The translations under genes were made by a program, and so were the position numbers. A stretch of DNA of 62,974 nucleotides, counting the filler, from Octopus bimaculoides (taxonomy: Eukaryota), in NCBI RefSeq assembly GCF_001194135.2. It is 6 parts of 4 records of this genome, joined end to end, with 100 filler letters (N's around TTAATTAATTAA, not from the genome) between each part and the next. Parts side by side here need not be neighbours in the genome. Positions count along the whole stretch, not along the records: positions 1 to 16,373 come from NC_068991.1; 5 more parts are not named here. The stretch is one strand, 5' to 3'. Positions 4,640 to 5,046 of the stretch are shown here, piece after piece (position 1 is the first letter of the stretch; each line of letters opens with the position of its first letter). Below the pieces are notes generated by a model, which was not told the DNA's origin, ran no database searches, and saw only the letters and a program-made list of their open reading frames with translations.

Positions 4640-4907
4640 TTCTCTAAAATGCATGACTTAAATACTATAGAAGTAATATATTTCTAAATCTCTCATAGAG
4701 ATTTATGCAGTAACAGCACGATAAAGTGATAGTATGTTGTCAATTTAATGTGACAGTCCCATAAAAGGGAAGAATGCTACTGTTATTTAGCCCTAGGAAT
4801 CACATTTCCTGTGTACTTATATTTTCAAAGTGGAGATAAGCACCTCCACCCAGCAAAGCCAGCATCCAGAGACTAGTTTCAGAGTCCTTGCTCATCATCA
4901 GTCTGGA
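4640..4907 (-). mobile_element. Hammerhead-headed non-coding repeat (family X), homologous to 52681-52990
   Basis: Downstream of the HHR, tgctgggtggaggtgcttatctccactttgaaaatataagtacacag and cctagggctaaataacagtagcattc..atgggactgtcacatta align by eye with tgctgagtggggatgccaacctcccctgttcgaaaatataaggacacag and cctggagctaaacaacagtggcattc..atgggactaccacatta at 52.7-52.9 kb. Confidence 0.8.
4865..4907 (-). ncRNA. Minimal type I hammerhead ribozyme, intact catalytic core
   Basis: UCCAGA-CUGAUGA-U GAG caagga CUC U-GAA-ACUAGU-C-UCUGGA. Perfect 6-bp helix I, 3-bp helix II (U.U at base), palindromic helix III, GUC cleavage triplet. Confidence 0.88.
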
Positions 4908-5004
4908 CTATATCAATAAACTTAATAGTTCTAACCACCAAAAGCAAATGCAATGCTTAGTTGAAGGGTATTAATATCAAGAGCTGAATGTCACGTGTCT
5001 ATAT

Positions 5005-5046
5005 TACGAGTACTAGTTTCATCAAAAGTTGATTCTTCAGTTCATA
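5005..5046 (-). ncRNA. Minimal type I hammerhead ribozyme, intact core
   Basis: UAUGAA-CUGAAGA-AUCA acuuu UGAU-GAA-ACUAGU-A-CUCGUA. 4-bp helix II, palindromic helix III, GUA triplet; helix I pairs 5 of 6 with an A.C closing mismatch. Confidence 0.82.

What the first reader, a model, noticed from the sequence alone, without database searches (positions are those of the whole stretch)
4865..5046. Tandem pair of near-intact minimal hammerheads sharing an ACUAGU palindromic helix III
Seen: two same-strand type I HHR cores (CUGAAGA..GAA ACUAGU A at 5046-5005; CUGAUGA..GAA ACUAGU C at 4907-4865), 97 nt apart. Helices I and II are unrelated in sequence but both paired. Established: minimal HHRs with a palindromic helix III work as dimers by cross-pairing that helix. 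Inference: the pair could form an intramolecular dimer and excise an RNA of about 140 nt that could circularise. A SINE Pol III head lies directly upstream on the same strand, but its TTTT at 5059-5062 may terminate transcription.
Basis: partly seen in the sequence, partly recalled or inferred. Interest (0 to 1): 0.85.

Follow-up and report, generated by a model that had tools for sequence, protein, structure and literature searches.

The report
Two adjacent minimal hammerhead ribozyme relics
Two small hammerhead-ribozyme motifs of a well-known, very abundant retrotransposon-associated kind really do sit 140 bases apart here, but they are unrelated copies that cannot pair with each other in the way needed to cut out a small RNA circle, so the locus is ordinary.

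Summary
On the minus strand there are two type I hammerhead motifs: HHR1 at 5046-5005 (cleavage after A5011) and HHR2 at 4908-4864 (cleavage after C4871). Both have an intact core, their own helices I and II, and the palindrome ACUAGU in place of helix III. None of 1000 shuffles of the piece gave even one such motif.

They belong to a known class: minimal type I hammerheads with a diminished, palindromic helix III. These occur in thousands per animal genome, in Penelope-like element repeats and as dispersed solo copies.

The proposed mechanism fails. In a double hammerhead, helix I must form between the 5' strand of one copy and the 3' strand of the other. Here only the within-copy helices I pair. 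The hetero double hammerhead scores +3.0 kcal/mol, against -10.6 and -23.6 for the two homodimers.

The two units share nothing outside the core, and the 140-nt would-be product folds worse than shuffles. The upstream SINE is a separate later insertion with a 12-bp target-site duplication.

Most likely these are two unrelated solo ribozyme relics lying side by side. Interest is low.

The parts
5005..5046 (-). HHR1, a minimal type I hammerhead motif. Helix I 5046-5042 / 5009-5005; core CUGAAGA 5040-5034; helix II hairpin 5033-5021; GAA 5020-5018; palindrome ACUAGU 5017-5012; predicted cleavage 3' of A5011.
   Evidence: Sequence read, pattern hit, descriptor hit with helix I 5 bp and helix II 5 bp, within-copy helix I duplex -3.2 kcal/mol.
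4864..4908 (-). HHR2, a minimal type I hammerhead motif. Helix I 4908-4902 / 4870-4864; core CUGAUGA 4901-4895; helix II 4894-4881 (U.U then 3 bp); GAA 4880-4878; palindrome ACUAGU 4877-4872; predicted cleavage 3' of C4871.
   Evidence: within-copy helix I 7 bp, -9.1 kcal/mol. Its helix I, core, palindrome and cleavage site match a tandem-repeat ribozyme family in three metagenome contigs.
4909..5004 (-). Spacer between the two motifs. It has no similarity to the sequence downstream of HHR2, no repeat and no stable fold.
   Evidence: Alignment scores are within the shuffle range. The 140-nt would-be product has z = +1.45, with 189 of 200 shuffles folding at least as well. There is no other copy in the window.
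5059..5387 (-). Complete tRNA-derived SINE (SINE_A), 329 bp, ending in TTT. It is a later, independent insertion, not part of the ribozyme unit.
   Evidence: Weak tRNA-like match at 5377-5318. Its 3' half is 88.6% identical over 185 bp to an inverted copy at 3383-3563. It is bounded by the target-site duplication below.
5388..5399 (-). Upstream copy of the 12-bp target-site duplication TAATATGTCTCA of SINE_A.
   Evidence: Exact 12-bp repeat 5388-5399 = 5047-5058, abutting both ends of the SINE.
5047..5058 (-). Downstream copy of the target-site duplication. Its first T completes the TTTT run 5061-5058. It ends immediately upstream of HHR1 helix I (5046).
5481..5604 (-). Older SINE fragment (SINE_B): head and start of body only. 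It is unrelated to the ribozyme region.
   Evidence: Local alignment to SINE_A and SINE_C ends at 5481. The SINE bodies show no similarity to 5058-4600 beyond shuffle level.

Best explanation
These are two independent copies of the known class of minimal type I hammerhead ribozymes with a diminished, palindromic helix III. This is the kind carried in the terminal repeats of Penelope-like retroelements and their non-autonomous derivatives, and scattered in thousands as solo copies through animal genomes.

Shown: each copy has its own matched helix I, its own helix II and an intact core. Neither can form helix III alone (one A-U pair closing CUAG).

Inferred: each could cut only as a homodimer with a second RNA of its own family, by a domain-swapped double hammerhead. 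Neither could use its neighbour as partner.

Inferred: the two copies lie 140 nt apart because elements of this kind tend to insert into or next to earlier copies, leaving short truncated ends. They come from two different families. With their weakened helix II bases and no coding remnant nearby, they are most likely decaying, non-functional relics.

Shown: a younger tRNA-derived SINE later landed just upstream of HHR1, its target-site duplication ending one base before helix I. It is unrelated to the ribozymes.
For: - The motifs are real, not chance.
- Class features are met. Type I topology, no helix III beyond a 6-nt palindrome, short helix I, and no loop-loop contacts, as described in PMC4209133, PMC6765202 and PMC7761336.
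- Those papers report thousands of such motifs per metazoan genome, 'mostly as single elements probably related to truncated PLEs', with extreme sequence variability within one genome. [quoted passage not shown]
- A U.U mismatch at the base of helix II has a precedent in an axolotl retrozyme ribozyme family (PMC7229834).
- The two units are not homologous outside the core.
- Within-copy helices I pair and crosswise ones do not.
- Homodimer double hammerheads evaluate to -10.6 and -23.6 kcal/mol; the heterodimer to +3.0.
- An independent family with the same ACUAGU helix III, and HHR2's helix I, exists in tandem 727-nt and ~1020-nt repeats in metagenome contigs. So ACUAGU is a recurrent variant, not a private link between these two copies.
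- SINE target-site duplication.
Against: - No reverse transcriptase or GIY-YIG remnant was found within about 1.2 kb on either strand, or in the ten best ORFs of the piece. The link to Penelope-like elements rests on ribozyme type only.
- The source genome was not available. Copy number, family consensus and element boundaries for either motif are therefore untested.
- Neither motif has the G10.1-C11.1 pair that the PLE ribozyme consensus keeps.
- Two copies on the same strand only 140 nt apart is unusual enough that a single composite element with two ribozymes cannot be excluded.
- No cleavage data exist.
Confidence: 0.62

Rival explanations
1. The two copies fold into an intramolecular hetero double hammerhead through ACUAGU:ACUAGU, cut at A5011 and C4871, and release a 140-nt RNA that circularises, as a retrozyme does.
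For: Both cores are intact and on the same strand. The shared palindrome can form a 6-bp helix. Dimer action of such ribozymes, and a tandem arrangement in the genome, are established (PMC4209133, PMC6466107).
Against: - The crosswise helices I that the merged structure requires do not form.
- The hetero double hammerhead evaluates to +3.0 kcal/mol, against -16.0 for the two separately folded monomers.
- Forcing helix III costs 7.4 kcal/mol in the full transcript.
- The product is unstructured (z = +1.45), whereas a retrozyme-like unit from the metagenome family gives z = -2.33.
- The ends of the product would not rebuild either ribozyme.
- The only upstream promoter is a Pol III SINE, which ends in TTTT and is a later insertion.
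Confidence: 0.04
2. A decayed dimer of a non-LTR retrozyme. It would once have been two tandem copies of one ~140-nt unit, each with the same ribozyme, now diverged beyond recognition except for the selected core.
For: The spacing of 140 nt lies at the low end of animal retrozyme units (~150-300 bp, PMC7761336). Same strand, same palindrome.
Against: - There is no detectable similarity between the units or their flanks.
- Tandem Repeats Finder reports nothing here.
- Each helix I is still internally complementary, yet differs between the copies at nearly every position. That would need many paired compensatory changes while the rest decayed completely.
- The unit is unstructured.
Confidence: 0.1
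3. One composite mobile element, for example a terminal repeat of a Penelope-like element or a non-autonomous derivative, that carries two different ribozymes by design.
For: The motifs are close together on one strand. Terminon and PLE sequences are reported to carry hammerheads in several regions (PMC7761336).
Against: No second copy of the region exists in the 16-kb piece. No element boundaries or coding remnant were found. Untestable without the genome.
Confidence: 0.2
4. Chance resemblance in AT-rich repeat-laden DNA.
For: Rfam finds no hammerhead. The bare core with a palindrome occurs by chance at about 0.056 per shuffled window.
Against: - The full motif occurred in 0 of 1000 shuffles, yet two are present on the same strand within 140 nt.
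- Random core matches in viral DNA lack the helices.
- Rfam also misses the clear metagenome relatives.
Confidence: 0.02

Closest known systems
Minimal hammerhead ribozymes of Penelope-like elements (Cervera & de la Pena 2014, PMC4209133; Lunse, Weinberg & Breaker 2017, cited in PMC6765202 and PMC6466107)
   Same: Type I topology, an intact 11-nt core, no loop-loop tertiary contacts, and a short helix I. Helix III is reduced to a short palindrome, so only dimers can be active. They occur as dispersed solo motifs of very variable sequence in an animal genome.
   Different: No PLE reading frame or terminal repeat is recognisable around them. The G10.1-C11.1 pair of the consensus is replaced by A-U (HHR1) or U.U (HHR2). 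The two neighbours come from different sequence families.
Animal non-LTR retrozymes (Cervera & de la Pena 2020, PMC7229834; Li et al. 2026 preprint, 10.64898/2026.07.22.740005)
   Same: Type I hammerheads on one strand at a spacing close to the smallest retrozyme units. A weak helix III and a U.U at the base of helix II both have precedents in axolotl retrozymes.
   Different: Retrozymes are tandem copies of one unit, so the ribozymes are identical and the excised RNA rebuilds the ribozyme on circularisation and folds into a stable rod. Here the units are unrelated and the product is unstructured.
Double hammerhead of ASBVd and newt satellite 2 (Forster et al. 1988, as described in PMC6155905 and PMC6466107)
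   Same: Two hammerheads in one RNA whose short palindromic helix III segments can merge into one longer helix.
   Different: In those cases the two copies are identical, so the swapped helices I pair. Here they do not.
Tandem-repeat ribozyme family in metagenome contigs L001-L003
   Same: Identical over the 12 + 15 bases required by the search pattern (CCAGA-CUGAUGA ... GAAACUAGUC-UCUGG), which include HHR2's ACUAGU palindrome, GUC site and helix I. One helix I pair differs on both sides (G.U against U-A).
   Different: Helix II is a canonical GACC/GGUC stem with G10.1-C11.1. The ribozyme sits in structured 727-nt and ~1020-nt tandem units. There is no similarity to the window outside the 42-nt ribozyme. 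Identity over the 27 specified positions was imposed by the search pattern, so common descent is not shown.
Schistosome Sm-alpha / Sj-alpha SINE-like elements with a hammerhead (PMC6765202)
   Same: A Pol III tRNA-like promoter element and a hammerhead lie next to each other on one strand.
   Different: In Sm-alpha the ribozyme is inside the element. Here it lies outside the SINE's target-site duplication and beyond its TTTT terminator.

Membership tests
Hammerhead ribozyme, type I | Conserved core C3-U4-G5-A6-N7-G8-A9 and G12-A13-A14, in the order helix I 5' strand, core, helix II hairpin, GAA, helix III, H17, helix I 3' strand | tested here: met
   Both copies.
Hammerhead ribozyme, type I | Cleavage triplet N-U-H with A15.1-U16.1 | tested here: met
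   GUA (HHR1) and GUC (HHR2). A15.1 and U16.1 are present at the ends of ACUAGU. The pair can form only in a dimer or as a lone pair closing CUAG.
Hammerhead ribozyme, type I | Helices I and II base-paired, with G10.1-C11.1 closing helix II | tested here: inconclusive
   Helix I is 5 bp and 7 bp; helix II is 5 bp and 3 bp. Position 10.1/11.1 is A-U in HHR1 and U.U in HHR2.
Hammerhead ribozyme, type I | Match to a curated Rfam hammerhead model | tested here: not met
   No hit at the gathering score or at E<=10. The models also miss L001-L003, so they do not cover helix-III-less variants.
Hammerhead ribozyme, type I | Mg-dependent self-cleavage | not testable with these tools
   Needs in vitro transcription.
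PLE-type minimal hammerhead | Helix III absent or reduced to a short palindrome; no loop 1 / loop 2 tertiary contacts | tested here: met
   ACUAGU in both copies; feature as defined in PMC4209133 and PMC6765202.
PLE-type minimal hammerhead | Unpaired nucleotide between A9 and 10.1, followed by G10.1-C11.1 | tested here: not met
   HHR1 has no spare nucleotide and has A-U. HHR2 has U on both sides of a GAG/CUC stem. The metagenome relative L001 does show the feature.
PLE-type minimal hammerhead | Located in the terminal repeat of an element encoding RT and GIY-YIG endonuclease | tested here: not met
   No Pfam domain in six frames of 3590-6170, nor in ten other ORFs. Most published motifs are likewise solo copies (PMC4209133).
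PLE-type minimal hammerhead | Belongs to a multi-copy consensus family in its genome, with compensatory changes | not testable with these tools
   The source genome is not in any searchable collection. No second copy exists in the window.
Animal non-LTR retrozyme | Tandem repeats of one unit, each with the same type I hammerhead | tested here: not met
   The units are unrelated. No tandem repeat is reported at 4780-5060.
Animal non-LTR retrozyme | Excised monomer folds into a stable, highly self-paired structure | tested here: not met
   z = +1.45 for 5010-4871, against z = -2.33 for the L002 unit.
Cis double hammerhead | Palindromic helix III segments able to merge | tested here: met
   6-bp ACUAGU:ACUAGU.
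Cis double hammerhead | Helix I formed between the 5' strand of one copy and the 3' strand of the other | tested here: not met
   The crosswise duplexes score -2.0 and -0.2 kcal/mol with about 1 pair in register. The whole structure evaluates to +3.0 kcal/mol.
SINE carrying a hammerhead (Sm-alpha type) | Ribozyme lies inside the SINE unit, downstream of its Pol III promoter | tested here: not met
   The ribozymes lie outside the 12-bp target-site duplication and after the TTTT run.

The most novel reading that the evidence does not exclude
Unrelated minimal hammerheads that share one helix III palindrome might activate each other despite mismatched helices I. For example, a 6-bp helix III might hold the substrate strand well enough, or a chaperone might help. 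Any two neighbouring relics with the same palindrome would then become a processing cassette that releases a small RNA.
Probability: 0.03. Interest if true: 0.5.

Novelty: new member of a known kind. Interest (0 to 1): 0.15.

Why it matters
It matters little as a discovery. Minimal hammerheads with a palindromic helix III have been catalogued in very large numbers in animal genomes, and their dimer mechanism is established.

The useful outcome is a rule for later scans. A pair of such motifs can act as a cis dimer only if helix I pairs crosswise between the copies. That test is quick and separates true retrozyme or tandem-repeat dimers from neighbouring unrelated relics.

The work also shows that Rfam's hammerhead models do not detect this class, so a negative Rfam result should not be used to dismiss such motifs.

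Tried and rejected
- Rfam at gathering and permissive thresholds: no hammerhead. Uninformative, because the clear relatives L001-L003 are also missed.
- Tandem duplication of one unit: rejected, since alignment scores are within the shuffle range and there is no Tandem Repeats Finder array.
- SINE as promoter or part of the element: rejected by the 12-bp target-site duplication.
- Ribozyme region as the decayed body of the older SINE_B: rejected, because homology stops at 5481 and the SINE bodies do not match 5058-4600.
- Search for a Penelope-like reading frame: six frames of 3590-6170 and ten other ORFs gave no RT or GIY-YIG. The remaining stop-to-stop frames are short or low-complexity and were not all scanned.
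- Further degenerate hammerheads in the piece, allowing one core mismatch: none.
- HHR1-specific pattern in viral contigs: no hit.
- Literature search for the literal sequences: only unrelated primers.
- Two key papers (Lunse et al. 2017; Arkhipova et al. 2017) are not held. They are cited only through reviews.
- The organism was not identified. The tRNA-SINE and microsatellite landscape, with assembly gaps, looks like a cephalopod-type draft genome, but this is an impression and was not tested.

Full report
**What is there.** Read on the minus strand, the region holds two complete type I hammerhead motifs.

- HHR1 runs 5046-5005. Helix I is UAUGA over UCGUA (5 bp, with a C.A mismatch next to the core). 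The core is CUGAAGA. Helix II is AUCAA-CUU-UUGAU. Then come GAA, the palindrome ACUAGU, and A5011 as the cleavage nucleotide.
- HHR2 runs 4908-4864. Helix I is GUCCAGA over UCUGGAU (7 bp, one G.U). The core is CUGAUGA. Helix II is a U.U mismatch followed by GAG-CAAGGA-CUC. Then come GAA, ACUAGU, and C4871.
- The cleavage sites are 140 nt apart.

**Is it more than chance?** Yes.

- The literal pattern occurs twice, against none in 200 shuffles.
- A general descriptor was written without reference to these sequences: core, GAA, an A...U palindrome of 4-8 nt, H17, helix I of at least 4 bp, helix II of at least 3 bp. It gave no hit in 1000 dinucleotide-preserving shuffles of the piece. The bare core plus palindrome occurred at 0.056 per shuffle.
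- As an empirical control, 23 matches to CTGATGA-N(8-20)-GAAACTAGTC in viral contigs were examined. None combined a helix I of 4 bp with a helix II of 3 bp.
- From these rates, two full motifs on one strand within a few hundred bases is negligible even across a genome of gigabases (my estimate).
- Rfam reports no hammerhead here at any threshold. It also reports nothing for three unambiguous relatives. Its models evidently require a helix III, so the negative carries no weight.

**What kind of thing it is.** The anatomy is that of the minimal hammerheads described by Cervera and de la Pena (PMC4209133).

- These are type I motifs without loop-loop contacts.
- Helix III is missing or reduced to a short palindrome.
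- They are found in the terminal repeats of all Penelope-like elements and 'massively' through metazoan genomes.
- Most are solo copies 'probably related to truncated PLEs', with extreme sequence variability within one genome.
- Animal non-LTR retrozymes carry related type I ribozymes in tandem units and are now argued to derive from PLE terminal repeats (PMC7229834; preprint 10.64898/2026.07.22.740005).

ACUAGU cannot fold back on itself. It can form at most one A-U pair closing CUAG. Each motif is therefore inactive alone on structural grounds.

**Related sequences elsewhere.** A metagenome scan used HHR2's helix I, core, palindrome and cleavage site, leaving helix II free. It found three contigs.

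- The contigs are homologous to one another.
- They carry the ribozyme CCAGA-CUGAUGA-(G)GACC-loop-GGUC-GAAACUAGUC-UCUGG once per unit, in tandem units of 727 nt (L002) and about 1020 nt (L001).
- The L002 unit folds better than all 20 shuffles (z = -2.33).
- This shows that ACUAGU is a recurrent helix III variant in retrozyme-like elements.
- The window shares nothing with these contigs beyond the 42-nt ribozyme. Identity over the 27 specified bases was imposed by the query, so common descent is not established.
- One helix I pair differs on both sides (G.U there, U-A here). This is suggestive but is a single case.

- When two palindromic helix III segments merge into one helix, A15.1 of copy A pairs with U16.1 of copy B. 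U16.1 of B is followed by B's cleavage nucleotide and B's helix I 3' strand.
- The junction is completed by A's core, A's helix II and A's helix I 5' strand. Each active site is therefore composite, and helix I must pair crosswise. This follows from the chain order of the type I motif and the published double-hammerhead model (Forster et al. 1988, as described in PMC6155905 and PMC6466107).
- With identical copies this condition is automatic. Here it fails.
- The within-copy duplexes score -3.2 and -9.1 kcal/mol. The crosswise ones score -2.0 and -0.2, with about one pair in register.
- Evaluated explicitly, the double hammerhead is -10.6 kcal/mol for HHR1:HHR1 and -23.6 for HHR2:HHR2. It is +3.0 for HHR1:HHR2, whose predicted optimum is simply two separate monomers at -16.0.
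- In the 208-nt natural transcript, forcing the ACUAGU:ACUAGU helix costs 7.4 kcal/mol and produces no three-way junctions.

**The 140-nt product.** RNA cut at both sites would not look like a retrozyme circle. It folds worse than 189 of 200 shuffles (z = +1.45). Joining its ends would place HHR2's core next to HHR1's helix I strand, and these do not match.

**Are the two units old tandem copies?** The flanks and spacer do not align above shuffle level. Tandem Repeats Finder reports nothing here. Each helix I is internally complementary yet differs from the other at almost every position. Independent origin is simpler than a diverged duplication.

**The surroundings.**

- The SINE directly upstream (5387-5059) is a complete 329-bp tRNA-derived element. 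Its 3' half is 88.6% identical to an inverted copy at 3383-3563.
- It is bounded by an exact 12-bp target-site duplication, TAATATGTCTCA, at 5399-5388 and 5058-5047.
- It therefore inserted later into a sequence that already held HHR1. Its TTT end plus the first T of the duplication makes the TTTT run.
- An older SINE head fragment (5604-5481) is unrelated to the ribozyme region.
- Six-frame translation of 3590-6170 and ten further ORFs gave no reverse transcriptase or GIY-YIG domain.
- No further hammerhead-like motif exists in the piece, even allowing one core mismatch.

**Conclusion.** The most likely account is two solo relics from different families of PLE-type minimal hammerheads, lying side by side through adjacent insertion. 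Each could cut only with a partner of its own family, and both are probably decaying. I put this at about 0.6. The main uncertainty is that the source genome could not be searched. A composite element with two ribozymes (about 0.2) or a very old retrozyme dimer (about 0.1) remain possible. The class is well known, so the finding is a new instance of a known kind and of low interest.

Noticed in passing
L001, L002, L003 (metagenome contigs Ga0314680_10104106, OBQE01000158.1, OQVM01076114): A family of structured tandem repeats (units of 727 nt and ~1020 nt), each with one minimal hammerhead with an ACUAGU helix III. L002 holds more than one unit and ends in an Illumina adapter, as expected if a circular or multimeric RNA was assembled. 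In L003 one copy abuts microsatellite-rich DNA about 15 nt upstream of the ribozyme. It looks like an undescribed retrozyme-like element of unknown host.
   Followed up: partly
L012 6710-6742 and L014 2966-2998 (viral contigs): A match to the hammerhead core with a perfect 6-bp helix II (GCUCUA/UAGAGC) but no type I helix I. It may be a hammerhead of another topology in a phage, or chance.
   Followed up: no
window 3196-3600 (+), 4505-4440 (-), 5604-5481 (-), 8772-8869 (-), 8964-9023 (+): At least five further tRNA-derived SINE copies or fragments of related families lie within 6 kb. One head (4505-4440) runs into a (TAA)n microsatellite. This is a dense SINE landscape.
   Followed up: partly
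window 5313-5379 (+): The weak Rfam 'Plastid-ycf2 5'UTR' match (23 bits, E = 0.03) is the reverse complement of the SINE's tRNA-like head. It is an artefact, not a plastid element.
   Followed up: yes
window 1054-1579, 2126-2478, 6176-6305, 6700-7248, 11224-11555: Five assembly gaps (runs of N). Four abut simple-sequence tracts on at least one side: TGG at 1030-1053, TA at 2095-2125 and 2479-2523, AT at 6107-6175, GT-rich at 6306-6355, and AT at 11556-11590. The gap at 6700-7248 has only a 6-nt repeat just after it. The long 'inverted repeats' and many ORFs listed by the tools across these positions are made of N and simple repeats, and are not real.
   Followed up: yes
window 4901-4800 (-): An AUG overlapping the end of HHR2's core opens a 32-codon frame across the ribozyme. 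In the Anolis Poseidon element the PLE reading frame also starts at helix II, 26 bp before the cleavage site (PMC11167929). The frame here is too short to test for homology.
   Followed up: no
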